NCBI GenBank assembly: GCA_001938485.1
Contig: MQRK01207995.1
Location: 80,793 to 144,792, forward strand
Direction of reading: 5' to 3'
DNA length: 64,000 nucleotides
Source: Girardia tigrina
Lineage: Eukaryota
In this document: positions 1,610 through 58,000 of the stretch, in pieces
Position numbering within the stretch: position 1 is the first letter of the stretch
Layout of the letters: each line of letters opens with the position of its first letter
Position numbers and translations under genes: made by a program
The notes under the pieces: model-generated
Database searches by the model: none
Seen by the model: only the letters and a program-made list of their open reading frames with translations
What the model was told of the DNA's origin: nothing

Positions 1610-4600
1610 CTGAATTTATGAAACAAATCAAAGTTTTTCTTTCTTTTGAATTACTTAGAAAAAGTAAAATGAATATCAATTAGATTCAGAAATTTATTAA
1701 GTGTATCAAGATTTTTATTTGGAGATTAACAATAAATGAAATTCATTCATTAAAAAAATATATTTAACTACGTAACCGGATGTTTTATCACCGGACGATT
1801 CATCACATTTTTATTTTTCTAGTGGACGATTCACCACCGGATGTTTCATTACCGGCCGATTAATCACACTTTAAATGAAATTATAATAATTTTTTATTAA
1901 ATAATTCACCATACACTAAATAAAATTTTATAAATTAAAAGTAATCACATTTTTATTTTTGCCGAATGATTTTTTTATTAAACAATTCATCATATTTTAA
2001 ATGAAATTTTACAAATTAAAGCCTTCAGTCATTGCTCTTATGCCGGTTAATAATTTTATATATCCATCAATCATCCATCAATGTTGACTTTTCTTCAGGG
2101 AATAATCAATGAAATGGCTATGCAGACTGGAAGTTTTTATTGGCCGCAGCAGGAAGTCATAGAGGACCAAAGAAACAATATGTAATACTTTAAGAGCAGA
2201 TCAGGAGTGCAGTTGAAAGTTGCATGAGAACAAGTCGTTTGATGTTTTTAAGTTATACTGCTAATAAATATTGTAATTCTTATATTCTTGTAATATAAGT
2301 ATATTTATATATATTTTATCTTAATTCATTAGTCATAATTTTAATTCAGTATTGGTCAATCAGTGATAAGATGTGTCTTAAAAATAGTTTGTTGTGAAAG
2401 TTATCGAATTTAGTACGAATTATCGTTAAAATAATTGTTTTTATTAATTTCAAAATTAAAGCAGGTTTGATGAATCATCCGCGAGAAAAATAAAAAAAGA
2501 GATGATTCATCCGATGGTAAAAAGTCCTAGAATCTTAACTATAATATACTTTGAGGGACCAACCGTCATCTTCAGGTGACGGAATAATAATTTAATTCAT
2601 CTATAAATAAATGTAAAAATAATGCTTATGTAATCGTTTACATGAACTTAGGCTCATAAAAAATTCTCAATCAGTTGGTTGAGACTGCCTATTTAACATT
2701 GATTTTAAGGCAAGGTTACCTAAATAACAAGACTTTATGCGACAATCTCTCCCAATAAGAGCAATTTTGCAGAACATAAGAAAATATGTAAATGTGATAT
2801 TAATAAATTTGAGATTCTGTGTTAGCATTTCGATAGTTATCGGGAGAGGAGATGGTTTAATTTTAACAAGAGCAAAGGTATGTATTACTTTGAAATTTAA
2901 GAAAATGATTATTAAAACTAAGTCTACCTGAAGCTCGTTAAAGAGTTTTTGATACTCGCTAAATGAAGCAACATTGCGCAATTGATCAAATGGTGAAAGA
3001 TCTGTCTTCATCGAATTTATCAGATCAACAGTTGCCTGATACTGACGATCAAACCCCATCTTTTCGGTAATAATTTGAGCAAGTGAATCTATTTGAGACT
3101 AAAATATAACACAATAATTATGTAAATATTAATAATAACAATAATAATAATATAATGTTTGTAATGACATAACTGTTCTCAAAATATAATAATATTACAC
3201 TAAGATGATGTCACGTCTCATCATATCATCTGAGTTCGAATTAAAGTGATTTTATATTTAATGAAATCACCTGAATATGCAATTGTAATATCAGATTGCA
3301 TTGAATGAACTGATCCAAGGATTTATTTTATAATATTGCTTCAATATAAAAGGAATAATTATTTCGTTACGTTCAGTTATTGAACCATGCTTGCGTTTAA
3401 ATAGATTTTATTATGAAATTTCTGTTCTTTACAATTTTAGCAGAATTCGAGAAAGATTCAACAAATCTCTTTCCTAAATCTCGGGAATTCTAGGTCAGTG
3501 ATGATGGTTCACCATCTCAAAGTTTGATTCAAAAACAAAAACAACTGCTCAGACATGGTCAAGTATCTCATCAGCAATCTTCCTTCTGAAATCCTCCAGA
3601 ATTTCGACTCCAACGCTGCGAAATGCCTCAATTCTTTAAGGCAATATAAAGAATTGCAAATATTGATTTTTAATTCTTCTAGCCGATCACAATTCGATTT
3701 ATTTAGCAAATATTTCCAAGCTCAAACATCGGGTAATTTTACAGTCTCATAATTTATTTCAAAAACTATTTCGGAATTAAACTCATTTTAACCTAACAGT
3801 CATTCAAATTCAGAACTCGTGAAGCAATTATTTCTAGTCACTAAGCTAGTTCACATTTGTCCATATTATCCGGCTCCAATGAATCCCAGCTTTTTGATTT
3901 GGCCACAATTGCTGATCGTGTTCTTCAAAAATCAACAAAACAAATGTTCCACCGACCCTCAGGTTGCCACGAGAATCGGACGGAGGCAGCAGGGTTACGC
4001 AGTGAACTCTTTCCGATTTGATTGTGCTGGGCCCATTAATTGAGAGTGCCGTCGAATCCCAGACATGCGGTAATCGAGCTGTCTATTCGGCAGATCAATC
4101 GATCTAGGTTGGTATAAGCCGGCCGTTCGATATCGAGATTCTGGCCGCAGATATCGTAAATCGCTTCATTGTCCACCACAAACGCACAATCGAGTGTTCG
4201 AGAGTCGTATGAGTCATCAAGACCAAATCGTATAATTCAACGACTACAGTAGCGATCTGCGGAGCCGGATAAACGGCGAATTCGAGTTTCGACCTCCTTT
4301 CGCAACCGACACAATTTGAAAAGCCCTTTATAAGTCTGTAATTCATATTTTTCTTCTTTTCAAAAAATCAAAAAAAAACAATTGAAAACACGAAATCAAT
4401 CCACTCAAATTCAAAATCAATAATCCATCAATTTTTCCAGAAAATGTTTTCAGTTAATTTAATTTGTAAAATAAAACAAATTTCAAGATCGAAAAACTTT
4501 CACCTTTTTCAATGAATTTTTTACCTTAAAAATATAAAACAATTTTTTTGAATCGATATAACCGTCATAATAAAATTTCAATGAAAACAATTGTAAAATT

Positions 4601-11400: not shown

Positions 11401-13393
11401 ACCGTTCGATAACATTCATTAGGTCGCTTAGTTGATTCTGTTGCGACTTGGCTATATCTAAAGGGTATGAGTTCTTGGATGACTGTAAAATATCTAATCC
11501 CATATCATAAAGTTGTTTTATTTCTTTCGATAGTGATTTCGCGGTTTCTAACATTTTGTTGATGATTTTATGCTCCCATTGGGCGTTTGTTTGAACGTCT
11601 TGTCTTAAACGATTTAAACCTGATGATATTGACTCATATTTTAATTTGAAGCTTTCTAAGCATTTGTAGGCTTCTTCTAAATTCGATCGTACTGATTTCA
11701 GTTGTTCATCTAATGAATTTCTTTCACTGATAATTGTTTCCAATCTTTCTTTAAAGGCTTTCTGCTCGGAAGGACAACTGGTGGTTAAGGAACAATTGTA
11801 TGACTTTAGTAAATGATTGAAAATTTTATCAGCTTGGTGTTCGTTGTTCATGAGTTCCTGAAAAATAAATACTTTTTGATTTCTTATAAAAACTCAAATA
11901 TGAAACAAGAGAAAATATATTAATTTGAATTAAATTTTTTTTCGTATTGCCAAAATAAAAGGAAACTTAAGAATTAATTCAAAATAATAAGAAAATAAAA
12001 TAGTACAGTTTCTGATAGATCAAAGGAAAATAAAAGTATTATTTAACGGAACAATAAGCCAAACAATATGTTAATATATAATAAACATTTCGACTAGCAA
12101 TTATTATAATTCCATAGATCTAATCTCCAAATGAATATTATATTTATTGTTCTCCTTCTTGTGTTTTTATTGTAATGCAAATAGTTTTTTGTTACTTTAT
12201 CTTTTGTCTCGTTGACAATAATTAAATTACATTAACAATATTTAATAAAAAGGTTGACCAGACGTCTAAGTTTTGTGAGATTTGTTACGAATTTTCATCA
12301 TTTATCAGGATGTCCTATCTTTTAACATTCAAACAGAATTAGTTTCAGTTACTAAGACAATTTAATCACCCAATTGTACAGGGTGGCCCATAAGTCCCTA
12401 CCTTTTTTGGATACATCATAGGAAAGCGCTAACTTTTTATATCATATAATAATTGTTTGAACTTATTAACAAGGGTTTATTAACTTATTAACAATAATTT
12501 TAGCCCACGTTTAATTTATAATGAGTGATACTAGTCCATATTCTATTCCATATCGCGTGCTAGCAGCAGCATGGCTGTGACGATCTGACAAATCAAACCA
12601 GACCATGCGACAAGTAAAGGCAACGCTGCGAGCTCTTGCGACAATGCCTTATGAAGAATGATCAAGTGTAAAGTCATGTCGAAAACATTTCATACAATCA
12701 ACGAGCTTAAAGACGAGGTCAAACAGGACATTCACGCCATTCGGACATATACATTGCAGGCCATTCACAAGTGTACATTCCGACGCGTCCAATTATGCAT
12801 TAACAATGATGGATATCAGGTCGAAACCTTTGATCATTTACCTATATCCTCTGTAATAAATAAACTATGTTGCGTTGGATTCTTTTGTGTTTAAAAAAGA
12901 ATAGGAACTTATTGGTCACCATTTACATTCATCAATAAACTGGATATGCGATAGATTCAATTAAAATCTGTAGATTCTTATAATGAATAACTTATATCTG
13001 TAATCTGTTATAAAACAGTAAATAAATTACAAACTCATTTAATTTAAGTATTTACAAAGAAAAGAAAGCAAAAAGCTCAGTACAATAATATTAATAGCTG
13101 TATCTACGACAGTGACTGAACGTGTGAAAGTGTGGGAAATGTCCCGGTAATGTACCTATAATCTCGGACTATTTCGTCCTCAAAGCAACAAATGTTCCGG
13201 TTAGCCATTATCCATTTATGAGCTTATAGCACGTTTACATAATACAAAATTTATAACATTAATCATCAAAATTATGATTTATTCATTATAAGATGCTATT
13301 CAGTAATAAATTGAGATGATCAATTTTATTTTTAGCCTTTCTAGATTATGATTTATATAAATGAAAATCGTGTAATAATAATAATAATAATAA

Positions 13394-31800: not shown

Positions 31801-34800
31801 TCGTTATAATGTGCAGCGATTTAACTAGTTGAGTCTTCAAAAACCATTGGTTTTTATTAATTCTCATTTTACGACATTCTACAAGAGGACCCGTTTGATC
31901 TTGATGATTTATGATGAACTCTTTGTACACAATATATTCATAACCCACCGGCGCAGTCGTCTCTGGCAATTGACTGGTTATCTCGTTCAAAAAATTTTAA
32001 TGAAATACATCATAGCAATTCAATCGGATACTCTCGAGATTATTGATTCAACTGTGTCTCGCAAATATGGCAAATCAAATGGTAATCACGGTCTTCTAAC
32101 TCTTGTAGATACGATTTAACAATACATTTATCGTGATCTGTTATGAAAGAATACTAGTACACATTGACTTAATGTTCGAAACAGAACAATTTTTTTAATT
32201 ATTTATTTATTATTATTATTTTTATTCGATTATTTCTTTTAAAGTTTCTTCACAATTAGTCCTAAAATATTTTTGAGATTGTCTTTTGAAGAATGATCTG
32301 AATTTGAATGATGGTTTTTCAAGGAGTCCGAAAACAGATCATTTGTATTTTAGTTCTGAAATAACTCACTTGAACTTCTTTTTAACTTTTCGGTTTAAAT
32401 ATAGATGATTATGATCAGTAAAGATCTTTGAATTCCATAGTTTTAGATTACAAATAACAATCGATAATTGCGGATCCTGATAAAGGTCTCCTAAAATAGT
32501 TTTGATCAACTTTAAGATCCATTATCGATTATTAAAGAAAAAAAGTTAAAGAATACGGACATATATTTCATAAAGTAATGGTAAAATATTGGTTTTTGGC
32601 CAAAATGAAGTTAATTGTATTCTTTATAACATCCAAAACTGATTTGCGAACAATAGTTGTTCTCATTATATATTTATTGAAATAACCTTTTGATAAAAAG
32701 ATTATTTGAATTGAAGTTTTTAAATATTTTTTAAATATAAATAAATATTGTACATTGAATCAGCTATGAATTTTATGGCAATTGTCATGATTTAATAGGA
32801 AGTTTCGACAAATATTCAACTGACAACTGATTTATATTTAAGCAAATTGTAAAAAACAAGTGAGGAAATAGTTACTTTTTTCGAAGAACAAATCTATGGC
32901 TTTTCTTTTCTGATTTAAGTATTCTTTTTTCCAAGACAAGAAGTTACCATTTGTTACTGAGAATATTTTTTATTTCCGGTTGCCAGTTACGTACACATAA
33001 GAGGAACAAGTCTCTAAAATGTTACTTGTATTTTTTATTATTAATTGTAAAAACGTAGCTTATACAGTGATTCAATCAATGGAAAATTATAAGCTAGTTT
33101 TTACCAAAATTAAAATTATTACTTAGACTAGTTGAAAAATGAAGTCTATCAGTAAATATGTATGGTTATTTCAACAAGTGAAATGGTTAAACAAAATGTG
33201 TATGATAGATTATGTTTAATGATGATATATAACAGTGAAGAAACGTATAACAGATGATTTTAACAAATAAAGTTACTTCCAAAAAATTGTGTTTAATAGA
33301 CAGTTAGCGATAGAAAGGTTCGTAGAATTCACAATATATGAGATTTGACGGAATTGTCGAATAACTAATTTTTTTGAGCGACAATTATCAAACGATCTTC
33401 AGGAAATCAACAATTATTGATATAGATTGTTATTTGACTGATCATTGTATTAACGAGTCCAAAATAAGGAAAAAAATCCAAATAACGAAAGTAATTCCAA
33501 ATAATGAAAATAATTCTTTCTAATTATTTTTCTATTGATTTCTTGTCAATTATATATATACATAATTATATTTATACATAAATACACAGGAATAAGTAGG
33601 ATCACTACATTAATCATTTTAAAAATAGTAAATTATAATATCATCAGAATGTAAAATACACTTTAAAAATTGTAAACGAAACATTCTTCCTCTAGTCAAT
33701 TTTAACCATGATGTATCTTTTGTTATAAGACTTACGTGACTTTTTAAGACTACTTCCTAAATTGTATAAATAATAATTAATTTGAAGACTGAAATGAATA
33801 CTGTTCTTCAAAAATTTTATTGTTTCTATTTCAAATGTTGGAGACTTTTTTATTCTTTAGTGATGTATGAATTGGAATTTTTAATTTTTTTTAAAGTATT
33901 TAAATAATAAATTCATAATTAATTAAAAAAGAGAAAGTAATCTTTAAATAAACTAAACTTATTTATTTTTTGTATTTATTTTTTTACCCATGCTAAACAG
34001 TTTACCAATAAAAGTAAATAATGTTTCTTTTTTTCGGTGGGACAAACAAATAATTGAAAGAAAAATTAATTAAAGATTAATTCTTTTTTGTCTGAAATTA
34101 AATATTTGAATAATTAGAAATTATTAAATAAATGTTACAAAACAATTAATAATAATCAGGACAATGAACACACTAAGAATATTATCCATTCTTTAATGCT
34201 TTTGTTGTTGATTTTAGTGCTCTCTTTCGTAAATTTTTATATAAATTTAGACATTCTCATATCATTCTTTTTTCTTTCTTTCACTATTTTTAATAGTCTT
34301 TTGATTTCATATTATGGTCTTTTTCATGGGGACAAGTTGCTTCTCCTCCGAAAAAACATTTTGATGTAATTTAATACATCATAATTTAATGATTAAAAAA
34401 ACTTTAATTATATTATTTTATCAAATAAAAATTGAAATTGTTCAAATTTTGTCATTGAATATAATTTTTTTGTCACTTTTTAAAATTTTGTTATTCTAAA
34501 TTCATATTTTTTTCATTTTATATAAAGATTTTGTTCTTGAACATAATAATCGGAAGAGAAATAATCGGAGGAGAAACGTCGTAGGAGAACTTATACGTAC
34601 CCCTATTTCATTTATAAAAAGAGGTACACTAGGTCGCTAAATTATATGAAATATTATATTTTACAAGGATGTTGGATATTCAGCAATTCAAATCAATTGC
34701 ACGTTACTAATTGTATAGACTTGATGTAACTACGCTAATAGATCGATTTTCGTTGCCCCGATTTACAATGATTCGCTATTACGCTCTTTTCAACATTTTT

Positions 34801-37800
34801 TTTATAAATCAGTCAGAAGAAATCATTCGTTTTGTGCAACCGATGTGGCTAACGTCGGTATTTCAACATTATTTTGTAAAATCGTAAACAGAACAGGACA
34901 TAGCGCACACTTTGCTTGCGTGGTAGCATAATACCCTTTTTTATAATAAATTCATTTAGATATTTTCGAAAATTCATGAATGATGTTTTATCGTTACATT
35001 TTTTGACAAGTAAAATTATTTTTTCATTTAGTACATTATTACCTAAAAGGTTTTTATTCAAAATTATGCATTGATTCTATTAAGAACACCAATTTAACTT
35101 TTCATATTTTTATTTAAACAACAATTTTGATTGTCCTTAAGACAATCTTTGTCAAAGCTTTCGCACGATGGCATTATAAACTAAATTGATTAATGAATTA
35201 ATTCTTATTATTTTTTAGCAAATGGGGAAATAAATATTTTAATAAACTATTTACTAAAAACTTATTGGATAGAAATTAAAATGATTATTAATTATTTAAA
35301 AAATATTAATTTGATTTATTTATTAAAAATTGTAAAAACTAATTAACTTATTTAAAATTCTAAACACGCTCAAATATTATATTGAGCATGTTTAGATGAC
35401 ATAATAATCCATTGATGACATAATCACTGCTTGTCTATATAAGCAGATTTAAAATTCATTTTTTTCTTGAGACCTGGCGATGACGGTTATACCGTCGAAA
35501 TTAAATCCAATTGAGTGTGTTTAGATGACATAATAATCCATTGATGATATAATCATTGCTTGCCTATATAAGCAGATTTAAAATTTATTTAAAATTGTAA
35601 ACTTATTTGAAATTAAAAATAAATTTAAACATTACATATTTTTAGATAATAATAATTAAAATATTAATCATCCATCTGGGTAGGAGAGACACATTTCCAA
35701 ATCAACATACACATTCAAACACAAAACATCAAACATTCAAAATATTCCTCACAGATTCAAACAAGGGAAAATCCATTTCTTTTGAAACACAGTTGGAAGT
35801 GCTGCGTTGATTAAAAACTAGACAAAGGAAAATTGACATTAAAAATCCTTTGAATTTTTTTTGTAGATATTCATTTCGCCTATTTCAATTATTTAGTTAA
35901 TTCTTTTTCCTATAAAATTTTATAATTATTATAATTGTTTTTTAATTAAATTATTTTATATCAAAATAAGTTATGATTTTAAATTAAATATTTTCAATTG
36001 TGCTTTTATTTATTATTTATTTTATTTTTTTTTAATTTTTAAAGTAAATTTGGATTTTCTAAATATGTTATTTGGCGAAATGAAATTTTAACTAACTCCT
36101 TATAGTGTTTATTACTGAATCATATTTTAAAGATATAATTAAAGTCAAGTATTATAAAAAAATATTTCAGATAAAAGATCTTTACTGTTCCTCCATCTGT
36201 CAGTTCAAGAACACAAAGAATACATTTTTTCAACACGGATTTTTGTGAAAACATAAAATTTAAATACTGCATTTGTCGTCTTTGTATAACCCCTTATGTT
36301 ACGAACAAAGGGTATGAATATCCAAATAAAATGTATGAGTTGATTCACTCGACAAAAAAATAAATAAATTGTTTTATTTTAGTTTCTACATCAAAATACA
36401 AGATTCTTCATTTCCTGGTAATTTCCTTCCAATATGTAAAATTTAGTTAAAGTTACTTTGAAATACATATAAAAACCAAAATGTTTAAAATATTCATATT
36501 CATATAAATTTATTTAAATCAAGAACATGAGCAAATTTAAGTCGGATATAATTTATCATTTATTTTCTATTGGTAAGTTTTTACATTCATTATTCTGCAG
36601 GACTGAACAATTTGTGGGTCAAAATATCGAAACGATAAATCATAGTTCTCAGCGTTAATTATATTAATCTTCTAACAACCAGTGAAATCTCTAGCGAGCC
36701 CATGCCAACTTTGCGGTTTAATATTTTCGTTAAAGTATAACTTTTAGTGCTTAGTGATAAACAGTTTTATAAGTCACACTCTGATTTAGTAACTCGAAGA
36801 TTTCATAAAGTTTCTGCTTCCTAAGTTATAAAATGTGATATATATGAAGGCTCAAAGTTGGTTTAGGGTCGCTAACGAACCCGCTGTAGTTAGACGGTTA
36901 ATTAAACAAAAAAACATCTGTTTATTTCAAAAATATTGTTACATAAAATTGAAAAATTCAACTTACAATACACAAATTGTATTTTAGCTCTTTGTCATGG
37001 GCGTTTTCAGATCTGTTTGATTCCTCTTCAACCGATTTTTCCAACTGATATAAAACGTCTCGACTCTCTGACAATGTGTCATTCCATTCTGTTAGATTTC
37101 CATCACAAAATTTCCATTCTTCTTCAATTATTGAAAGCTGTTTATTCAACTGTTGAACATTCATTTGTATGGTATTTGTAATGGAACTTATGTCTTCTGG
37201 AAATATCCTATTATCGAAAATTGATTCAGCTACATTTAGACAACTGTTTTGATGTGCAAGAGTTTCTTCAATGCATCTTTCGAGATTCTTAAACAAAAGA
37301 TTTATATTTAGAATTTCTTAATAATTATGTATTACACAAAATTAGTTTAATTTATTATCAATTTAATTTTACAATATTTTTTTAAATGCAGAAAGAGCCA
37401 AAATTCAATGTACAAAGTTAAAAATTAATGCTTTGCAAAAAAATGTTTATTTTAAAAGATCTTTACAATTATATTTATTAAAATAATAACTTACAGATGT
37501 ATAAAATGCTATTGGTAAATATATCACGGTAGTGGTCTGACAATAACCCTCGTTTAACTATACCCGTTAAAACTTTAGGTCAACTGAAGTTAATACCGTA
37601 TTTTCCGGTAGATAACGCGCAGTTTTATAAGATTTATAATCCATTTTGATGTATAGATAACGCGCATAGCAGGCATGGTTATATACCTAAGAGGTGTACA
37701 TCATTATCACCAGTACAGGATTCACATGTTCATATTTTGACAAAATTTAACATTTTTGTATAGATAACGCGCGCTTTATCTACCGGAAAATACGGTAATT

Positions 37801-40800
37801 TGATTTGCTTTTAGTTCACATTTTATTAATGAGCTATTATTTGTTAACGGAATCGTTTCCAGCAGAGGTTACATTAAAGTGTTGTGTACTTTTTTCTTAC
37901 TTGTTTTAATAAACAAGGGTTCCAATGAAAGGCAACATTTAACATCTATGAATAATAGTGCCCCTTATTATTTTACTCTTCCAGTGCGCCTGTAAATTAA
38001 CTGTATCCTCCCTGATAAGTGAATTGGTCCTGTAGACCCCATGTTTCATAACAAATTTCATTTTCTTGTTGTTTTCAGTCTGCTTATATTATATTGTTTT
38101 TCATAACTTGAATAGATAGCAACAAATTAACAAAAAATTAGTGAGTGACCGAATGATGACGATTGATTCGTCAAAATATATTGTCTTACAAATATATTTT
38201 TAAATGAATCAGTTTTAGCCGTTTAGTGTTAACCTCATACATGTGGTCTCAGTTGTGTTTCACAGCATGTATGAGTAGTAGAGCATCCCGCGTGCCTGGT
38301 CTTGTAATCAATTTCTTTTGCAAAAATGGCAAAAATAATTTTTTGCTGTGGATAGATAAATAAAACACACGGAAAACCAAGTTCCGCACAATTAAAGAAA
38401 ATATAATTCGGGTCCAGGGCAATAATCTTCTCAAGTAAAAGTTTTCAAATAGAATTTTTTTGTCAGAATTTTACGCAATATTTTAATTTTTTAGAACACT
38501 TTATTTTTAATTTAAGGATTTATAAACTATTTCTTCTATTTTTTTAATTCGACATTAAAATATTTGTTAGTCATTACGGAAGGAGATGTTCCAAAACGGA
38601 AATCCTTTTAATAATTGAAAACTAAACGTATCTATTATTTATTCGTTAATCTTTCAAATTCATTCATGCTCATTAGCAATGGTAAATTTAGTTTTCATAA
38701 GGTATTTTACCAATAAAAGGATCAACATAAAATCAAAAAACTATAGTTAAAAATACTATTATAAAAGTTTTAATGTTTAAATTAATTTAATTTGCATTTA
38801 AAACATAAATATCTTGCAATTAATATTGTTCGGGAACTCCGAATTTTCAGTTTTTTTTCCATTTTTAGATCTTAAAAAGTTTTTTCGATCAAATTTTCAC
38901 ATAATTACGTTTTTGAATGAAAATAATTTTTGATTTGGTATTATTAACACTTTAACGGTAGATCTTACACAGTTAAACTTAACCAGGGATCGATATTATT
39001 CCATTCTTTTTATTAACTTACTTACCACAGATATATACATGTGTGTATCCATGGAATTTAGAAACTATATTTGAAGGATTTTTACTCAATCGATTTTCTT
39101 CAAACTTTGCACACTTATTCATTCTCTATGACAAATAAATGATGATGTGAAAATTTGATCAAAAAAACTTTTTAAGATCTAAAAATGGAAAAAAAACTGA
39201 AAATTCGGAGTTCCCGAACAATATTAATTGCAAGATATCTATTTATAAATTATAATTAGTTCATATTAATTTTTATTATGTTTTTTTAATTAAAATTTTT
39301 TAAATGTTAAATTTTTTAAATTATAAAAACTTTGTTGGCAAAGTAGAGTTCTGTTAGCATAAAGAATGGATATAAAAAATTTAATTTTTTGATTTACTAG
39401 TTTTAATTATAAGTTTGGAATCGTCCAGAAAATGAAGTACATAGAGTGTTACCGCTCAATAGCTGCAGGTGATAATATCATGCATGTGTTGTGTGATCGA
39501 CCTCTAACAGTTGTTCCGGCTATCATACACCTGCTGAGTGAGCGCCCATTTAAGTGTTAATATTAATGTAATTCTTGAATAGATAGCAACAAAATAACAA
39601 AAATTATTTATTAAAATTATCCTTATCTTTCATTTAAACAATAAAAATCCTAATTAATTAAATAAAATCTACCTTTGATGTTTTTTCAAGGTGCAAAAGA
39701 TAATTATTATCAATCGCGTCATGAGAATGACTTCCAACTTTGAAATGGTCGAGTTTTACTTTCGTTTCTCGTTTCAAATTATAGAGCTCTTCCATCACAT
39801 TTTCGTGAGTTTTGAGATTTTCTCTCAATTCGGCTTTATTTAGACCAATTCTTTGTCGAAATTCTTGAAGAGTCGTACAGATATCGTCCTTCATCTTCTT
39901 AACGGATAAGTCTTTGATGTCACTATCCATTTCAATCAAATTTTGTATATCTACGTTATTATGCTTCTCAATTTCCTAAAAAAATTTTTTTCATAATATA
40001 TGAAAAATTATTTTCTTAAATTAAAATTTCAAAATTGACTTGGATTTTGATTATCGATGTGAGAAATACTGTAGCATAACTCAAGTACTCATTTAAGAAG
40101 CAAAAGAAAGAAGAAATTATTGTCTACAAAAAAGACTGCCATAAAAGTGTATATGACCCAGTGAATGGTCCGCATTGTTATAAAAAAAGTTTTGAAGGGA
40201 TATACAGGGTGCGGCAGCTATTTGAGAACAAAATGACATAAAGTTCAAAAAATGAATATACAACAGAAAAATAACATTTATTACAATTTAAAATTTTACA
40301 TATATTAACACGTANNNNNNNNNNNNNNNNNNNNNNNNNNNNNNNNNNNNNNNNNNNNNNNNNNNNNNNNNNNNNNNNNNNNNNNNNNNNNNNNNNNNNN
40401 NNNNNNNNNNNNNNNNNNNNNNNNNNNNNNNNNNNNNNNNNNNNNNNNNNNNNNNNNNNNNNNNNNNNNNNNNNNNNNNNNNNNNNNNNNNNNNNNNNNN
40501 NNNNNNNNNNNNNNNNNNNNNNNNNNNNNNNNNNNNNNNNNNNNNNNNNNNNNNNNNNNNNNNNNNNNNNNNNNNNNNNNNNNNNNNNNNNNNNNNNNNN
40601 NNNNNNNNNNNNNNNNNNNNNNNNNNNNNNNNNNNNNNNNNNNNNNNNNNNNNNNNNNNNNNNNNNNNNNNNNNNNNNNNNNNNNNNNNNNNNNNNNNNN
40701 NNNNNNNNNNNNNNNNNNNNNNNNNNNNNNNNNNNNNNNNNNNNNNNNNNNNNNNNNNNNNNNNNNNNNNNNNNNNNNNNNNNNNNNNNNNNNNNNNNNN

Positions 40801-43091: not shown

Positions 43092-46000
43092 AAATGCATC
43101 AAATATAAAATAAAAGGTTTTCAATTAAATATTATTAAAATAAAGTATTTTAAATTAAATATTATTTTATTAAATATTTAAAATTAAATATAATACTGTA
43201 GCATAGGTTAATTAACCTTTGTCGGTGTAGTAAGAACTTTTAAGCCGTGTTTCTGGGTCACTATGACCCAGAAACACGAACAAGGGTTAAATTTTAGAAT
43301 TGAAGAATTTAATAACTTAAAATAAAAATCAAAATTAATATTTTTTATTTTAAAATTATCAGAATATTATAGGATAAATAAGAGATTAGTTAAACAATAG
43401 AAATTGGCGAAATTATCATAAGTTAAAGAAAAGAACTTAAAATTTGTTTAAATTTGTGTGTAGTAAAAATCATTAGTTGTGCTATTCTGAATTCAAATAT
43501 TGATATAACTAACATATTGGGGTAATGTAAATATAAACTTTTTTTTGTTGATTTCGTTTGTTTATTTTCAACTATAGTAAAAATATTGTGAATTTTGTTT
43601 GTGTTAATATGAAAATATTTGTCATTTTATTTTATGTGATGCGTGCCTTGTTTCTATTATTTATATATATTATTTATTAAAATAAAACTTTAATTTATAT
43701 GATATTTATTTATTTTATTAAAATTATTATTGTTATTATTATCTTCGTCACGCACTATGCACTCTTGTTACGCATAGTGCGTCCTCATTTTGCGTGGCCA
43801 CACATATTTTATTTCTTAAGCCACGCATATTCCTTTGTTGAACGCGCATCACCGTACGCATTCAAAGCCTTGCCACGCACAATTTCTTTCTCAGTGCTCC
43901 ACTTTGTGTGACCACGCGCAAAATTATCTTTCTTACGCGTACTTCGCGATTTTGCTTGTTTTGTTACGCGACTACGTTAAGCCACGCGATTTTACGGATA
44001 GTATAAAAAACTCAATAAAAACAGCTCAAGACGTATTAGTTATATTTTCTCATAGGTAAACGACATTTCTTTTTTCTTAAAACGTATTAGTTGTATTTTC
44101 TCACAGCTTGCTTAGTAGCCAACTTCTACTTCGATTGATCCGTGATAGACTTTGAATTTATTCGACGACAATTTCCTAACTCCAATTATTTGTGATAAAA
44201 CCTCGGATCCTGATTTGACCGTGTGGAGACATTCGACTGATATTTCGAGACAGAGATTCCTTTTTCGGTGAAAGGTTATGCATAAATTTTTCTTAAGATA
44301 ATTTCTTTTAAAATTAATATATTTTAAAATCAATAATTCTTGTAATTATATTAAATTAATAATCTTTATCTATAAAATTCAAACTCTTGGTAACTGGAGA
44401 ACGGTGTTTCCCAGTTCCATAATATTTTTACATTATACACAGGGATATTGTTATATTTTTATTTTCAACAAATTGTAATTTGTAAAAATTTTTATAAACA
44501 TTTTAATAAATATTTTTAAAAGAAGTCTCACGTTGTTTATTCATTTATTCTATTGATTGATTTATAAATTCCAATTTATATAAATCGATTGTCAGGAGAC
44601 CTATTTATTTCTCATTTTGTTACAAGGTTTGGGAAATATAAAATTGACCCTTGTACGTAACAAACACTAATAAAATTATTTGCATTTGTACGCTAAGTTG
44701 ATGCTAAAGGAACTTTTAGAAAGGCAACTAAATATTTTAACTTATTTTCATCGTTCTTGAAATTTGATTTTTTTTGGTTACCTCAATGAACATTCTGTGT
44801 GGTTACGTCTATGGTTACGTATAAATACTTTAAAATATGCTGGGTTAGATGAATTATTAGTTTTGCATCTTAATCTTAAAGGTGATTAATGAGTAAAGTT
44901 TAAAATATGTTTCCATCAAGTATTATTCTCGGTTTAACTATTATTCATTTTATCCAATTTTCCTTGTTCGGGATTCAATTATTTTACTTATTGATATTAC
45001 AAATTAATTAATTATCTACATAAAAGTGAAAAAAAACCTTTTTGTGATTCTGATTGCGTTTTTTTGAATTTGTGGGTTTATATGAAAAGATTGGAAAAAA
45101 ACTATTATTTGTAAAACTATTATTATTAAAATTATTTTTTATTAAGAAATTAATTGGATTATGTGAAAAAGATGAATTTGTTTTATTAGATTAAATGAGA
45201 TTAAAGATGAAAATTTGAAAATAAAATCGATTCATTTGCCTTATTTTTTCTTTTGGAGATTTTGATTTCCACAAATTGATATTAACAAGAAATATTAATG
45301 GAGGAAGTCGAGTTGCCTTATTTGTTATTAAATTGGCTTCGAGGTGGTGCTGAAGAAATGCAATTGTCGGTCCTCGAACAACTGTGTCTGGCACTCTTGC
45401 AATACGAGACATTTTTTGTGTCAAGATTTCGATATTTCATTTGCGCTTCCTCACGGAATGATCAATCGATTGGTCAATGCCAAAGGATCATTAATTGCCA
45501 TTTGTATGAGATTGGAGAATCCCAATATGAATAATTCCATTAGTCGGATCAAATTAAAATGGGCCCAGCATATCGAGAAAGGTTCCCTGCGCAACCCTGT
45601 TACCTCAGTCCGATTCTCGGGGCAACCTGAGTGTCGGGCGGAACAGGGGTAACTACAAACATATTTCTAAAAATTATCAAAATAATAATTTAAATATTTT
45701 TAGCGGCATAAATTATTTTATAAAAAATTATATATTTATAAGTTATTCGATATTCTGTAAATAGATTTTCTTTTATTTTTTTCGATTATTAATATCAATT
45801 TTCGTAAATATATTTACCTCGATTTCTTTTAAATTTTCTTTCTTCATTTCAGCATTTATCATTTTATTCGAAGAGTAATTGAGTAATCTGTTTTTGTTGT
45901 TCAGGAACTTATTCTCAATAAGAGATACGACTTCTCTTTGCTCGTTGGCTCTTTTAGCATCCATTTCTAGTCTCTCTTTTTGTTTGAAGATCTCCGAAAC

Positions 46001-49000
46001 AAGAGATCGAAAGTTATGTTGAAGATGTTCTGCGTCTCTTTGGTGATTCCTCTCCTGAATCTCTGAAGGTGGAAGTTCAAATTGATTGAAGATATGAGCC
46101 TGTATTATCAGATCTTCTATTATCTTTTCTCCATTATCAATCGAAGAAATTAAATTATTTAATGTTTCTAATTCTGATTCGATATTTCTTTCACCAACTT
46201 CAGAAGATTGGGTCGCTTTTATTTTAGCTTCTGCTTCATTTATCCATCGATCATGATCTTCCTTGGCAGCCTTAAACTTTTCTATCATTTTGTCATAAAC
46301 ACTAACCTTTATTGAATCTACTGTATCAAGAAAGTGTACCGTTTTTTCTTTTAACTGGATAGATTTTTGCATCAACTTCTGAATATCTTCATCACTCGTT
46401 TGACTAATCAAAACCTTTGAAGTTTTTTCACAGTTTTCGATTTTATTAATCAAATCCTTCAGTTCTGTCAAACAAAGTCTAACATTTTGAAGATGAAATG
46501 TATCTTCTTTAGGATCTTCTAGATTTTCCTTTTGAAGACTTTCAATAATTCTTTCCAAATTGTTGGATGCATTCTGCAAATCTTTGGATAAAGTTTCTTT
46601 ACCGTCTTTCAAAGTTCGAATTTTTTCTTTCACTGTATTCATCAATTCTTCGGCATTTTCAAAACATTTTATTGTATTGTTGAGTTGAATTGGAAGATTC
46701 TTTGGGTTGAAATGATGATATGAGTCTTTCAACAATTTACTCACTTTTATATGACCCTCCTGAATTATTTCTAATTTGTTTTTTATTCTTTCCATTTCAT
46801 TTTCAATATAAGGGAGAGACATATTCTCATTGTTAAGTTTCTCTAAATCACTCAAACAATCGTACGTTTGCTTTTCCAAAAATGCTACTCCAGCCTCTAG
46901 TTCCTCAAGTTTTTGCATTTCGACATTAAAAGATTGTTCTTTTTCTCTCATCGGTGTTTGATATTGGGATAATTCTTTTTTAATTTTATCATTATTTGTA
47001 ATAATCGCACTATAAGACATCTCTTCAAATAATCCATCGTATTCTTGTATATTCTCTATACATTGGTCCACGATTTCCAAGCGTCTATTTGCATCTTCAA
47101 CATCAGACTGAACATTTTCCAACCACTCTTTTAAGTAACCTTTCATTTCTCCGGAAGTTTGAAAGACTTTATTTGCCTTAAATTTTTTAATTTTCTTCAT
47201 TATATTTGAAATATAAAGCCACTGTTCTTCGATGTCATTAACCTTTTCATAAATTCGGTTGAAACCATTTCTTTTTTGAGATAAATTTGTTCTTAAATTA
47301 TTCATATCATTAACAGTTTGCGCCACGCATTCTAATGGGACTTTTAGTTTAACACTTTTTTCTTTTGATAATTCGTCAATCATTTCGTTTAAAGATTGTA
47401 AATCTTGTTCTAAGTTGTCAACATTCTTCTCTATGGAATTCAATTCTTTTTGGACGGAATTCAAACCTGGAACTGTGAAGTATTTCATGGATATTGTTTC
47501 GAGTCTTTTTACATTTTTGCCAATATTTTCATCGACTAATTTTCTTTTCTTTTCGAAACTTTTCCAATTTTCATTGACCTTTGAAATGGATTTTGTTTTT
47601 TGGTTTAATTTTTCTTTGGAGTCCGCAATTTCATGATCGAGTTGGTTAAATAAATCTTGTAAATTGACCGGTTTGAAATTTATTTTATCCACAAGAGGAA
47701 AAAATCTTTTCCTTCCTTTCATCATTTTTTTCATACTTTCAAGTTTATTTTTGAAATTGTTTAAATCACTTTGAATGTTCTTCATATTATCTTCATTAGC
47801 AATGTTTAGCAGATCATTGACTTCCTCCAATCCTTCTTTCAGTTCCAAAATGTCATCATAGGTTTTCCAACTCCATTTATTAAAATCGAACATTTCATCA
47901 ATCGTTTGTTCAATAAAGAGTAATTTACTTGCTAAATCTTTATTTTTTTTATAACTTCTCACTAACCTTTCGTCTTTTGTCATGTCATTTAAGGAAATCA
48001 TCTTGTTACTTATATCTTCGATCTTTAAGCTTAACACCATACTCGTGTTATTTTTAATATTCTTCAATTGTTCATTGACGGATTCACCATCTCCAAACAC
48101 AATATTCATGTCCTTTATTATATTATTGACATTTTCAACGTCCTCATCAATAGATTGTAACTCATCCAGAGTGGCATCCAGTACTTCTTTTTTGGACGTC
48201 TCCGTGGCCATCATTTCCTGGCATTTATCCGAACTTCTTTTCAATTCATTACTTAACATTTTCAGTTGACTTCTTAATTTTTCCACGACTGTTGAATTAA
48301 ATATTGAGTTTTGATTTCCGATTTCGAAATTTCTTTTCTCGCATTTATCCAACATTTCATTTATATTTTCTTTGATTTTGTTAATTGATTGAATTTTATT
48401 TTCAAATGTCTCTAGATTGTTTGCCGAAACTTTATCAAGAGATTTGATAATGTTTTTAGATGCCATTTCAATATTTTTGACGAATTCCTCGTTTTCAACC
48501 ATAAATTCCATACCACATTTTGCGTAGATGTATTCCTCTTCGAATATACCTTTGAGGGATTTCGATCTATTTAATAACTTCTCAAACTGATAATTCACTT
48601 TTTCCACAGGCGGACGAAGAGTTTTGATATTAGTTTCCAATGTCTCATATATACTGTTTTGGCATTGTTCAAGTTTATTTTGGATGCGTCTCAGTTTGGT
48701 CAAGGGTACCTCGTTCTCCCAGTCTGCAATACTCAACTTTATAGATCTAGTTTCCGATAACTCTTTTTCTATATCATCCAACTCATTTTTATACTTACGC
48801 TCCCTTTCATTTATATTTGCCAAACTTTCTAAATAAGTTTCAACTTTATTTTCAAGAGAAGTTATATTATCGATTATTTTATCAACATCTTTATCGGTAT
48901 TTTTAAATAATTCATCAATTATTTTTCTAATAGTCTCTTGGTCAGAACTACTTTTTCTTAGCAAATCTTTGATAATCTTATCTTTCGTCGCTTTACGCTC

Positions 49001-52000
49001 TTTGACTTCCTCTTTCAGTTGTCCTAACTCATTCAAAAGACTTCCATTAATTTTCGATTGTAGTTCGGTTTGAATATTTTCAATTGCTGATACTTTGTCT
49101 GACACAAAATCTTCAAAATCTTTTGCCATTTCAGTCGAGTTGTTTAAAATTTCATTTTTGACTTTTAAATCTTGAATTTTTTTCTCAACATTCTCTTTAC
49201 ACTCATCAATAATGGTCTTCAAGGTATCTTTTTTGTTCTTAAATTCTGCTTCTTTTGTGGCACTAAACTTTGTATGAGACCTTTCTACAGCACTGCTAAG
49301 AGCTGTAAATTTTTCTTCAATGTTATCATCAATCCGAGAAAGAATGTTTTCTAGTTTTGATATAGAATCTTCAAATTTGATGTCGTCTAGCTTTTCATTA
49401 TTTAAAATGCTCAATTCCTTGTTGATATCATTTAGTTCAGTTAGGAGAGTTTCAGAATAGTTTTCTATTGCAAGTAAAACTTCTTTTGTTTCTTGCAACT
49501 TTTCTAATTTATTCTTCATAATTTGATTGATCATATTCCACGTATTTTCGAGATCAACGGACATTGGAGTGATGATACTTTGTGTTTCAGACTGATTTTG
49601 TAAATTCTTTCCTTCTTCGATTTCCATCAAAATATTCGGAGCTTCATTTTCCAAACAAGATAAAAGTTTTTGTTCTTCTTGATAAATGTCTTCTATTTCT
49701 AAAATTTCTTCTTCGTTTATTTGATCCAGCTGCATCTTTAATTCCAAAAGTTTTTTGTTTCGCTTTGCTAAACCTTCATTGATTTCCATTGACTTTGCAA
49801 CCATCGGCGCTGAAGGAAAATAAATCTTACAAAAACTAACAAAACAAAATGAGATTTCATAATTTATGTAGAGATATTATTAAAATTATACATAAAAATA
49901 ATGTGAAACTATAGATTAAAATATAATTTTTGCCGAATGTATAAGTGATTAGAAATTCCTTTTTCTTATAATAATTGAAAAATTAAGATGAATTATTAGT
50001 AGCAGACATTAAAACTTTTATTATACCACAAAAAATGTTTAAATCTAATATTTAAACAAATTTTTTTTGAGAAACTATTTGTTTTATAAATCTTAAACCG
50101 ATATAGATAAAAATACATATAAATATTCATATTTGATTTTTTTATTACTTCTATAATCACTTTTAAATCGTTTCACATAAAAATTATACACTTTTTTTTT
50201 ACTTTTTATATAATATTAAAACTATCAAAAAAATTTTATTAGCAATTTAATTGATCTTCTTAATTTTAGTAATTTTATTTTTTCGAATGTTACATATTTA
50301 ATTATATAAAAATTTTAATTTGTACATATTTAATATAACCTTCTTTCAAAAATTTTCCTAACATTTTTAATTTCTAACAATTATTATTATCATATTTTAC
50401 GGGGCAATGTAGCCCCAGTTTAAGCCTAAGGACCAATAAGATAATGCACAGTCAGACAAGCGTTTACGTCTAAAAAACAATGAGTAATTTCATCTTTACC
50501 GATCGCTGTCAAATAGTTCCTTTAGCTCATTCCGTATTAGTAAAATCTGCCTCCCTATGGATACTATGTGAAGTCAGTGTTAACTTGTTTCTCCCCCAGA
50601 ATGTGCTAATATTTGACAGTGATTCGTGATTATTTTAATGGCGTTTTCATATTTCTAAGGTTGTGAGAGAATCGGTATTTCGGACTTTAAATAAAAAATC
50701 CTAGACGTCAAATTTCAGAATGTTCTCAGAAATTAAGTATAAGCATATATTTATTATGAAATGTTTTCCAAAAATTAAGAAAACATTAGAATTTGTTAAT
50801 TTCTGAAAAATAAGGACAAATTTAAAACAGGGATTTTGAAAAGCTTTTAGAAAGATTTTAAAAATATTGATAATGAAAATAATTAGATAAATAGTACAAC
50901 ACATTTCGAAACATTACTTTCAATTTCACAAGGGCCTTTTTATATTTATCAATCAGAAAGTGTAATACTACAAATGGCAAAGGTAAACAAGGAAAAGATT
51001 TAAAAACTTGACAATTAGATGTTCTTGGAACTTCCTCTGAATTATTATTATGAGTTACTTCAGACATCCAAATTTTATTAGAATACAAAAAAATGTTTAA
51101 ATCTAATATTTAAACAAACTTATTCTTTTGAGAACAATTTGTTTTATAAAACAAAAATACTTATAATATTAATATTTTATTTTATTTTAATTTTATAAAT
51201 CAATTTTAAATTATGATAACATTTTAAAATATTTAATCGTTTGGTTTCATTTTATTAATTTTTAAAATCATTACACATTTAAAAATTATTCATTTTAATT
51301 TGTATATTACATTTTCGGCTATTTCAAAAATTCTTAATATTTAACAGCTTAATTAGATCTCATTAATTTTAAAATTTTCTTTTTAAACTTTACATATTTA
51401 AATATATCTAAATTTTAATTTGGACATATTTAGTGTAAGCTTATTTCAAAAATTTTCCAAACATTTTTTTTAAATTCCTAACATTGACCACTAAATTTTT
51501 CCTTAGCCATTCAAATTCTCCAACGTTATTCAAAAAAAGTAACATTTTTTCTCTTCATAACTGTGAGGAATGTTTTGAATTGTGTGTTGATATTGTGCAT
51601 GTTGTATGTTGATTAGGATTGTGCCTCTCCTACACAGATGGATGATTGGTATCTTCTTTGATTCTTACTAATTAAAAATAATTTAATTTAATTTTAAAGT
51701 AAAAAGATTTTAAATAATTTTTGAATGTATTATTTATTTTTTTAATCTAATTTAAAATTTTAATATACTAATTTAATATGTTCTTTTTTTAAAAATGTTT
51801 AGATTTAATTTCGACCAATTAGATTCTTTATAATTAATAATTTTTATTAACAGATTTTCATTTATAATAATTAGTTTGAACTCAGAAAAATATTGATCAA
51901 GAGAGATGTCAAATAGTGAATGCGCTTGTGATAATAATAAATGTTGCAAAACTCATATTGATGTTGTTAATAATAACCAGACGTTTTGAAATGGGATCAG

Positions 52001-55000: not shown

Positions 55001-58000
55001 ACTTAACCATGCAAGAGACTTTTAAAAGTTTTTGTTACTGACACTGAAGCACTTTGTTAATTCCAGGAGAGTCATCTCAACGACTTCGTAATACATTTCG
55101 CAATATGCACATCTGATAGACAAGTCCTGGTGTTCTGTCTGTCCCACAGATCCCAATACAACGAAATTCTCCAATTGTGAATTCATCTTAGTTCGTCTTC
55201 TTTTCAGTTTCGGTTCCATATCAATATGACCTTTAAATTTCTCAAAAAGAACTTGGAATTCCTCTTCATTACGGAGGCTGCTAATGCGCTCTATGACGGC
55301 ATCCATACCATCACATGTAGGTGACATAGATTGATGACATAGTAGCAGGGATAGTATCACTAGATGAAGTGACTGAAGTCACAGAATTCTTCGGAATGAC
55401 TTCGAAGAAATTCATGATGCTCTTGTGTGTCGAAATATTGTATTATAATAACATTAATGTCACAAGGTAGGATCAATTACAATGACACTATGCACTGTAT
55501 AGTTTGCTGTAAGATTAAGGTCAGAATAAGGACAGATATAGACAGCAAATGTGTGCTTCTGTATGCGTGTTTATTTGGATGTGGATGATTCCCTCATACC
55601 ACGTCAATCCATGTGTGCACACTTTCCTTCTCTCTCACCCACGCTACCTACATTACTCTCTGTCACCCTATAGGTCTGTTTTTCAGTTGTTCTCTATACA
55701 TTTTGCCTGTTGTGTGTATAGGTATGTATGTATGTGTGTTAAGGGGTAGAAAATATTTTTTCATATATTTTCTATTCTCAAGTGGACATTTCATTATCAA
55801 ATGGACATTTGAGTAAGTATGTTTGTTAAATTAACATTTTGATTGGTTAAATTGTATATTTCTTTCAATTTTAGATATGGATTTACTATCAAATAGACTT
55901 CTTATATAATTAAATGGACCTCACTGTACTACTACACTATGTATATGATATATGAATAAATATGACTCCCTATTTCTTTTTCATTTGTCCTTTTTACTCT
56001 GGGGGGTAGACTTGCGTTTGGGGGGCCGGGCCCTCTTGCCCCCCCCCCGACGGTACGGGCCTGTGTTGTACTGATTACAATATCCAGAAAAAGCATGATG
56101 AATAAGGATATTGTGCAAGGTCTAACGAATTTAGTTAACAAAAAAAATCGCCAGACCTGGCGAAACGGGTTCACCATAGTGTATTTAGTAGTTCAAATCT
56201 AAAATATTAAATATTTGACAAAAACCGCAAATTACTTAAGATTTAATATTATTTACAAATTAATTACAATGTATATCAAAAATTAAAAAATATTTATTAT
56301 TTAATGTTACGACAATTAAAAGATTTGAATAAATTACAATTTCAAAAAGTTGTAGAATAGGATAAATTAAAAATATATAATTAAAATTAGGATAAAATTT
56401 AGGATAATAATTTAAACGAAATTAATTGAGGAGTTTACGAAAAAAATTAATTAACACAAGTTTTTGAAAATGTATTTTGTTATATTAATGATTTTTTAGT
56501 GTTAAATAGGAATTTGTATTCTGAAATGTCACATAACGACAATAGCATAAACGACTAGCAGTTATAAAACCATCAAATTCTTTTGTACTCTGGAGATGTT
56601 TAATATTAATTACACGATGTTTTCACGTTGACCTCTCTGAAATTAATCCCATATCAATATAAGAAATTAGAAATTATATATTTGAGAACATTACTTATTT
56701 CATATTCTTCTAAGTATAACTTAAGACGTCATCAGTTGGAGTATTATTGCAGATTTTGCTTCTTTAGGCTTTTCTTGAGACTAATTAATTTAAGAGTGAC
56801 TGTTCGATTCACATTCGGGGGGCCCATATGGAAGTTAACCCGACAAATAATATTTGGAAAAAATCGTTTAAATGATGGGGCTGATTTAACTCCGAAAGCA
56901 ATTGAGACGAAAACACAGAAATTAAAGCCGAAACCAATCAACCAAAAATCAATTCAATCAATAGCGGTTCGTCGTAAAATTNNNNNNNNNNNNNNNNNNN
57001 NNNNNNNNNNNNNNNNNNNNNNNNNNNNNNNNNNNNNNNNNNNNNNNNNNNNNNNNNNNNNNNNNNNNNNNNNNNNNNNNNNNNNNNNNNNNNNNNNNNN
57101 AGAAACCAATCGGAAATGAATATATCAAAAGAAAACGAAAATTTGTGAAAAGAAATTGGAATTTGTTGATATACGAAAAAAGACGAAGAATTTTATCCAA
57201 TAAATTTTTTGGGGAATATGTTTGGAGATATAGAAGAGAGGGAAACTTTTGTACTTTCCTGTTCTGAGAGTTCAATCGATAACATCCTACTGGGAATGTG
57301 ATTTTTTTACTGTTTTATAGATGTTTATGACTTCAAAAAAAATTGATTTTGTAATTTTGATTTTCCGAGGGGTATTCGGTTGTTTTTTGTTGTCGAGGTG
57401 TTGTTAAAATTGATTGGTGAAAGTTTCGATTTTGTTTGAATCGAATAAATAAATAAATTTTTATAGCGCGAAATTTGTTTTGTTTGGTGAATGAATGAAT
57501 GAAATTGACAATTAAATCGATTCACTACGATTCCGAACGAAAATCGATGGCCGATGAATATTATCCGTTGTCACAAAGTGTTGTCGGGAATTTATTGGAT
57601 AAATTGTACGAAAAACGTAAATCGGTCGCGATCGATATCGAAAAAGTCGTCAAGCAATTGCGGAGCCAAGGCAAGAACGAGGAGATCGAATTGATCATTA
57701 AACATTGCGGAGAGACATTTTTCAATTCGAGCAATTGTCACTACCACAAGGGCGACACGATTGGGTTGACCGCTGTCGCCATCGCTCTCGGCAAACAAGC
57801 GGACGAGTACTGCAGTCTTATTATTTGTCCGTCCATCAAACTTCTCCACGATTCCGATGGCCGAGTTCGGTATTACGCATATGAAAGTCTCTACAATTGC
57901 ATTAAGGTTTTAAACGGTAATGTTATGCCGCATTTAAGCCCCCCGCGTCCCGCAACCCGCCCACCATCGCCAACGCGCCGCAGCCACCAAGCTGCGCTCG

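What the first reader, a model, noticed from the sequence alone, without database searches (positions are those of the whole stretch)
45558..45653. The shared module folds as a GNRA-capped hairpin inside a possible pseudoknot; no family recognised
Seen (hand folding): GTCCGA/TCGGGC plus CTCGGG-GCAA-CCTGAG form a hairpin, closed by GTTACCTC/GGGGTAAC. The intervening GGAAC can pair with upstream GTTCC, giving an H-type pseudoknot, and an alternative CCCTGTT/AACAGGG helix also exists. G-U pairs and a GCAA tetraloop favour function as plus-strand RNA. Inference: a ribozyme, an RT/transposase recognition structure, or an ssDNA origin.
Basis: inference. Interest (0 to 1): 0.8.

Follow-up and report, generated by a model that had tools for sequence, protein, structure and literature searches.

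The report
Hairpin end of gene-carrying mobile repeat
The GC-rich hairpin is the end of a small (about 90-base) jumping element in an AT-rich animal genome that has picked up and spread pieces of host genes; it is not the pseudoknotted ribozyme first suspected.

Summary
The GCAA-capped hairpin is real and specific to the plus strand. The pseudoknot and the two outer helices form fully only in this one copy. I found six copies: two in the window and four in ENA assemblies. The shared sequence starts at ATGGGCCC and stops at GGAACA with different flanks, so the module is an 87-92 nt mobile unit with a 17-bp 3'-terminal hairpin. In the consensus the 'pseudoknot' GGA is paired inside that hairpin. 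Five copies form a family in which an internally deleted HECTD1/TRIP12-like first exon is fused to the module. The sixth sits inside an alpha-tubulin pseudogene whose substitutions are A-to-G skewed (10 vs 0), a hint of an RNA stage. No Rfam family, ribozyme core, covariation, target-site duplication, poly(A) tail, or Helitron or Ginger end was found. The 5' part resembles a decayed tRNA (p about 0.01-0.04; inconclusive). Best reading: a short, tailless SINE-like retroposon whose 3' stem-loop is recognised by an unidentified reverse transcriptase, and which carries host exons as SVA_F1 does. The mechanism is inferred and the host is unidentified. Modest interest.

The parts
45559..45645 (+). 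Copy A of the mobile module (87 nt, ATGGGCCC...GGAACA)
   Evidence: Boundaries from six copies; covariance model R1 scores 107 bits
45605..45642 (+). 3'-terminal 17-bp hairpin. The 3' arm is a near-perfect inverted copy of the 5' arm; departures are mostly G-U
45622..45625 (+). GCAA tetraloop, invariant in all six copies
45561..45628 (+). Possible decayed tRNA-like head (A-box-like 45566-45577, B-box-like 45607-45617); inconclusive
45561..45597 (+). Weak 5' stem-loop (GGG/CCC, GCA/TGC). Invariant in all four distinct copies but without covariation
45646..45653 (+). 8-nt extension found in full only in copy A, complementary to 45599-45606; probably templated from the element at this junction.
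   Evidence: Chance of 8/8 pairing for a random flank from this window is 8e-5
45298..45558 (+). Captured N-terminal coding exon of a HECTD1/TRIP12-like E3 ligase, with internal deletions of about 54, 45 and 10 nt and a frameshift, fused to the module
   Evidence: Intact relative P0005/L005; weak TRIP12-N match; the name HECTD1 is from memory
45094..45297 (+). AT-rich upstream (5'UTR or promoter-like) part of the chimeric family, shared with L001-L003; true 5' end not located
3945..4036 (-). Copy B of the module (92 nt, 82% identical to A)
4039..4313 (-). Alpha-tubulin pseudogene piece (codons about 158-249) directly 5' of copy B; nonsynonymous A>G 10 vs T>C 0
3849..3921 (-). More decayed alpha-tubulin sequence (to about codon 307) 3' of copy B, so B lies inside the pseudogene

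Best explanation
The module is a short non-autonomous retroposon (SINE-like, 87-92 nt) with no poly(A) tail and no target-site duplication. Shown: it is dispersed, has shared ends with unique flanks, and folds on the plus strand into a long 3'-terminal GCAA hairpin followed by ACA. Inferred: (1) it arose from a small RNA, possibly a tRNA, whose 3' end was extended by fold-back copying to make the hairpin; (2) an unidentified stringent-type non-LTR reverse transcriptase recognises the 3' stem-loop and starts cDNA at or just after ACA; (3) because its Pol III boxes are decayed it rides on host transcripts. One copy came to lie behind the first exon of a HECTD1/TRIP12-like gene, by insertion or splicing, and the exon+module RNA was copied into a family with a fixed 3' end and variable 5' ends, as SVA_F1 did with MAST2 exon 1. 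Another copy sits in a tubulin pseudogene that appears to have passed through an A-to-I-edited RNA.
For: Six copies end at GGAA(C/T)A with different flanks. Copies A and B start at the same point although attached to different genes. L004 is 5'-truncated about 50 nt before the ATG while its 3' end is fixed. Only the plus strand folds; the hairpin has z -4 to -7 in the family and G-U rather than A-C departures. Both host fragments are in sense orientation to the module. E3-ligase homology stops at about the probable exon end of the intact relative. A>G 10 vs T>C 0 in the tubulin piece, p=0.004. tRNA profiles align collinearly from the module's 5' end on the plus strand only, p=0.013-0.04. 3' stem-loops in stringent LINE/SINE pairs and tailless retroposons: PMC3747384. 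Exon-capturing SVA subfamilies: PMC6139936.
Against: No partner LINE was found. There is no poly(A) or clear repeat tail and no TSD. The A/B boxes are degenerate. The tRNA signal is weak: 6 of 60 natural GC-matched controls score as high, and Rfam and ARAGORN find nothing. There is no covariation. Only two independent gene contexts are known. L001-L004 are short low-coverage contigs that may be read consensuses. The A>G skew could partly reflect transcription-coupled asymmetry, since B is on the host gene's sense strand. Intron loss could not be tested.
Confidence: 0.5

Rival explanations
1. Orphan LTR of a tiny TRIM (Helenus-like, tRNA-bearing LTR) or another TG...CA integrase-type end. Host fragments were captured by template switching during LTR-type reverse transcription, which would also explain the internal deletions.
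For: The module reads TG...CA from its second base. Possible tRNA-like content. Internally deleted, mosaic host fragments. Helenus exists in several animal phyla (PMC10886601).
Against: No second LTR copy near A or B. No 4-6 bp TSD and no polypurine tract. No PBS seen by eye. Helenus keeps GGTTC in box B, whereas here it reads CGTCC (AGTCC in A). Ginger ends (TGTNR; CCGG or RTATAY targets) are not met.
Confidence: 0.15
2. Terminus of a rolling-circle (Helitron-like, HUH) element, where the hairpin is the replication terminator. Copy B would be a former end left inside a mosaic of captured gene pieces.
For: No TSD. The hairpin lies 3 nt from a fixed end. The window holds other gene-fragment pseudogenes (Vac14; an unidentified fragment at 30638-30940). 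Helitrons are known to capture gene fragments (PMC6431247).
Against: No CTRR end or A|T site (HLE1), and no T|T site or short TIRs (HLE2) (PMC11417382; flanks). The 17-bp stem is longer than typical Helitron terminators (my own knowledge). The strand-specific G-U pattern and the A>G skew fit RNA better.
Confidence: 0.15
3. The hairpin is a historical scar, a fold-back duplication made during repair or integration. It has no function and is carried passively inside a larger repeat.
For: The 3' arm is a near-perfect inverted copy of the 5' arm, and A carries a further templated 8 nt. B has a broken pair and does not fold better than chance as a whole (z -0.07). No covariation.
Against: The same two ends recur in two unrelated gene contexts at 82% identity, which a passive scar would not explain. 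The hairpin is no more variable than the rest of the family (small counts).
Confidence: 0.12
4. A new pseudoknotted self-cleaving ribozyme that defines the element's end.
For: Sharp ends at both sides, a GNRA loop, G-U pairs, no Rfam hit, and a few invariant unpaired bases.
Against: The pseudoknot is complete only in A and is blocked by the lower stem in the consensus. No hammerhead or HDV core and no shared twister motif. No covariation.
Confidence: 0.04

Closest known systems
tRNA-derived simple SINEs and tailless retropseudogenes (PMC3747384)
   Same: Short, non-coding, dispersed, defined 5' start, possible tRNA-like head, 3' stem-loop, no poly(A) needed.
   Different: A/B boxes decayed, tRNA origin unproven, no TSD, tail is a fold-back copy of the head rather than a recognised LINE tail, no partner LINE found.
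SVA_F1 (MAST2 exon 1) and pt_SVA_D6 (STK40 exon 1) (PMC6139936)
   Same: A host first exon joined, at about its 3' end, to a retroposon 3' part and amplified as a new subfamily with variable 5' length.
   Different: Tiny element in an invertebrate-like genome; no poly(A), TSD or L1 signature; the exon carries internal deletions; a splice junction is not shown.
Helenus/Ajax/Cassandra TRIMs (PMC10886601)
   Same: Short TG...CA unit with possible small-RNA-derived sequence.
   Different: No paired LTRs, PBS, PPT or TSD; promoter boxes not conserved.
Penelope-like pLTR-mediated gene mobilisation (PMC3846280, PMC8557442)
   Same: A terminal repeat suffices to move host sequence in trans; one pLTR carries a 38-bp palindrome; TSDs are often missing.
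   Different: No hammerhead, no tandem or inverted pLTR arrangement, and the unit is much shorter.
Helitrons HLE1/HLE2 (PMC11417382)
   Same: Terminal hairpin, no TSD, gene-fragment cargo.
   Different: Terminal motifs and target dinucleotides not met.

Membership tests
SINE2 (tRNA-derived SINE) | Dispersed short non-coding copies with unique flanks | tested here: met
   Six copies, six different 3' flanks
SINE2 (tRNA-derived SINE) | tRNA-related head | tested here: inconclusive
   Best-isotype p 0.013-0.04, reverse strands null, but 6/60 natural controls as high; no Rfam or ARAGORN hit
SINE2 (tRNA-derived SINE) | Intact Pol III A and B boxes | tested here: not met
   No consensus box match inside the module; the B-box-like site reads GTCCGA in all copies
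SINE2 (tRNA-derived SINE) | 3' tail shared with a partner LINE | not testable with these tools
   Host genome not searchable; a 3' stem-loop is present
SINE2 (tRNA-derived SINE) | A-rich or repeat tail and TSD | tested here: not met
   only L002 repeats AACA once
SINE3 (5S-derived) | 5S rRNA-related head with box A, IE and box C | tested here: inconclusive
   No RF00001 hit even with truncation allowed; E. coli 5S alignment null but weak in power; no eukaryotic 5S reference obtained
Helenus/TRIM | Two LTRs with PBS and PPT between them | tested here: not met
   Single copy at each locus; no PPT
Helenus/TRIM | 4-5 bp TSD | tested here: not met
Ginger1/2 | TGTNR ends in inverted repeats; CCGG or RTATAY targets | tested here: not met
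   End reads TGTTC; flanks do not fit; no inverted partner within 6 kb
Helitron HLE1/HLE2 | CTRR end at A|T, or short TIRs at T|T | tested here: not met
Known self-cleaving ribozymes (HDV-like, hammerhead, twister) | Catalytic core and topology | tested here: not met
Self-cleaving ribozyme of a new class | Site-specific self-cleavage | not testable with these tools
   Needs an in vitro assay
Box H/ACA snoRNA | H box hinge, ACA three constant bases from the 3' end, guide pocket | tested here: not met
   No H box; the bases after ACA vary and there is no pocket
Penelope-like pLTR | Hammerhead in the pLTR; tandem or inverted pLTR arrangement | tested here: not met
SVA_F1-type exon-capturing retroposon (works like) | Junction at the donor site of the captured first exon | tested here: inconclusive
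   Homology ends within a few bases of a GT in the relative's gene, but the true intron is not established

The most novel reading that the evidence does not exclude
An undescribed class of tailless, TSD-less mini-retroposon: a small-RNA remnant extended by fold-back into a 3' hairpin handle. It has no working promoter, joins host mRNAs (by splicing or template switching, sometimes A-to-I edited), and so turns host exons into amplifying families.
Probability: 0.2. Interest if true: 0.55.

Novelty: new variant of a known kind. Interest (0 to 1): 0.3.

Why it matters
If right, a roughly 90-nt RNA handle is enough to make host exons mobile in an invertebrate genome. That parallels primate SVA_F1 without poly(A) or L1, and gives a compact substrate for finding which reverse transcriptase reads it. 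It would help explain the gene-fragment pseudogenes in this genome. It is not evidence for a new catalytic RNA.

Tried and rejected
Rfam at gathering score and at E<=10 on five inputs: nothing credible. Exact-pattern scans of viral, JGI metagenome and GTDB collections and blastn against phages: none, or chance hits that do not extend. Word searches with the module in two other reading frames: no candidates. The big protein search was used once, because family scans left the upstream protein open; it gave three hits, all E3-ligase related. Searches for the chimera in GTDB and viral contigs were blank. Coding constraint on the module: differences spread evenly over codon positions by hand count, rejected. 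Module derived from tubulin: nhmmer threads it through codons 251-275, but alone it is not significant and the position-constrained test is marginal (7/200 at best); not supported, not fully excluded. A and B as the two TIRs of one 42-kb element: host exons lie between them and there is no TSD, rejected. SRP-like and group II D5-like resemblances seen by eye: no Rfam support. A 5S resemblance recalled from memory could not be tested for lack of a eukaryotic reference; I did not type one in. Planarian tRNAs from PMC7962491 were compared by eye only: the D-arm looks Arg-like and the acceptor/T-stem Gln-like, with no single parent. Sample accessions are not in the paper library. N stretches were left untouched. 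Nothing appeared human.

Full report
Setting. The window is eukaryotic, about 28% GC, with (TA)n tracts, a mariner remnant and exons of one giant spectrin-repeat (nesprin-like) gene on the minus strand throughout. The host was not identified. A flatworm such as a planarian is my guess from composition and protein divergence; this is inference only. Nothing looked human, and N stretches were not filled. The module occurs exactly twice in the window, both times in introns: A at 45559-45645 (+) and B at 4036-3945 (-), 82% identical.

The observation. Rfam gives nothing at gathering score or credibly at E<=10.

More copies change the picture. A word search with the module translated in one frame found ENA contigs L001-L004, each carrying the module fused to the same upstream sequence as A. 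All six copies stop sharing sequence at GGAA(C/T)A and have different flanks; A and B also begin together at ATGGGCCC although attached to different genes. The closing helix GTTACCTC/GGGGTAAC pairs 8/8 only in A (3-6/8 elsewhere) and CCCTGTT/AACAGGG 7/7 only in A (3-6/7 elsewhere). The pseudoknot helix is 5/5 only in A. In L001-L004 the lower stem extends to 9/9 pairs and takes in the GGA of GGAAC, with pair probabilities of 0.89-1.0, leaving only ACA free; A has a private C-to-A change that opens this stem. In A the last pseudoknot loop would be a single base across a 5-bp stem, which is implausible by general pseudoknot geometry (my own knowledge). The robust structure is therefore a 17-bp hairpin with a GCAA loop at the 3' end (last 47 nt: z -4.0 in A, -5.6 to -7.0 in L001-L004, -2.5 in B) plus a weak 5' stem-loop. 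No pair shows a compensatory change among the four distinct copies, though power is low. The 3' arm is a near-perfect inverted copy of the 5' arm, with 3-4 G-U departures and no A-C. That fits plus-strand RNA but is only suggestive. A's extra 8 nt are unlikely to be random flank (8e-5) and are probably templated from the element (inference).

What it is attached to. Upstream of A and L001-L004 is the N-terminal coding exon of a HECTD1/TRIP12-like E3 ligase with its AT-rich 5' region. An intact relative (P0005, L005) shows that the captured piece has internal deletions of about 54, 45 and 10 nt, and that homology ends at about the probable exon end. Family copies differ from their consensus at 4-17 of 399 positions. 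L004 is 5'-truncated about 50 nt before the ATG while its 3' end is fixed. Copy B follows alpha-tubulin codons about 158-249, and decayed tubulin resumes after it up to about codon 307 (0/60 shuffles and 0/120 real windows score as high), so B lies inside a tubulin pseudogene. The upstream tubulin piece has 10 nonsynonymous A>G changes and no T>C (p=0.004). This hints at A-to-I editing of an RNA intermediate, but transcription-coupled asymmetry in the host intron could contribute, and the E3-ligase piece shows no such skew against its relative. The downstream tubulin piece is more decayed than the upstream one, which I cannot explain.

Origin of the module. Profiles built from 665 ARAGORN-called viral tRNAs align end to end with the first 70 or so bases, starting at the module's own 5' end, on the plus strand only. 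Best-isotype p is 0.013-0.04 against 1000 shuffles, but 6 of 60 natural GC-matched controls score as high, and real tRNAs score about 38 bits against 7-11. ARAGORN and Rfam see no tRNA. I noticed this resemblance by eye after trying several other ideas, so it is inconclusive. A 5S resemblance from memory could not be properly tested. A tubulin origin is marginal at best.

Family tests. No hammerhead core lies in the module, no HDV fold is shared by A and B, and no H box or consensus Pol III box lies inside it. There is no TSD, PPT, second LTR or inverted partner. Ginger, HLE1/HLE2, Helenus and pLTR features are not met.

Mechanism. Shown: a dispersed 87-92 nt unit with shared ends, a plus-strand 3' hairpin, and fusion in sense orientation to two different host-gene fragments, one of which became a family. 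Inferred (about 0.5): a tailless SINE-like RNA whose 3' stem-loop is the handle for a stringent non-LTR reverse transcriptase (PMC3747384), transcribed from host promoters and carrying a host first exon as SVA_F1 and pt_SVA_D6 do (PMC6139936). Rivals: orphan TRIM LTR or integrase-type end (0.15), Helitron-like terminator (0.15), functionless fold-back scar (0.12), new ribozyme (0.04). It works like an exon-carrying SINE, but it fails the box, tail and TSD tests, so I do not file it as a member of SINE2.

Verdict. A real feature and an uncatalogued mobile-element end with captured gene pieces; not the pseudoknotted catalytic RNA proposed. New variant of a known kind; interest 0.3.

Noticed in passing
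window 57547-57940 (+), then 57940-58040: Intronless Vac14 N-terminal pseudogene fragment (Pfam PF12755) followed by an unrelated C-rich 100-nt stretch; no module nearby.
   Followed up: partly
window 30638-30940 (-) and 31382-32150: CpG-rich gene-like fragments with no Pfam or PDB match; 128 nt duplicated at 99% identity (30599-30726 and 31382-31509).
   Followed up: partly
window 3400-3850 (-): Coding-like text after the tubulin piece of B, LRR-like by eye and with no Pfam hit; possibly a further captured fragment, making region B a mosaic.
   Followed up: partly
window 4039-4313 (-): Strong A>G skew (10 vs 0 T>C) in the tubulin pseudogene; the tubulin piece 3' of B is much more decayed than the piece 5' of it.
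   Followed up: partly
window 45094-45297 vs L001-L003: The AT-rich upstream part of the chimeric family is only about 76-85% identical between copies, while the exon and module are about 95-98%; unexplained.
   Followed up: partly
window 16540-17376 (+): Decayed mariner transposase (PF01359); another mariner-like remnant at about 24258-24638.
   Followed up: no
window 38735-39301: MITE-like element with 118-nt inverted arms at 92% complementarity.
   Followed up: no
window 35576-35754, 51560-51726, 59451-59542: A second dispersed repeat with three copies at about 72-77% identity.
   Followed up: no
window 43750-43995: GC-richer island with repeated CCACGC/ACGCG motifs, possibly subterminal repeats of a DNA transposon.
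   Followed up: no
window 7730-11851 and 45773-49804 (-): Two exons of about 4 kb of a giant spectrin-repeat (nesprin-like) host gene; copy A lies about 120 nt from the end of the second.
   Followed up: partly
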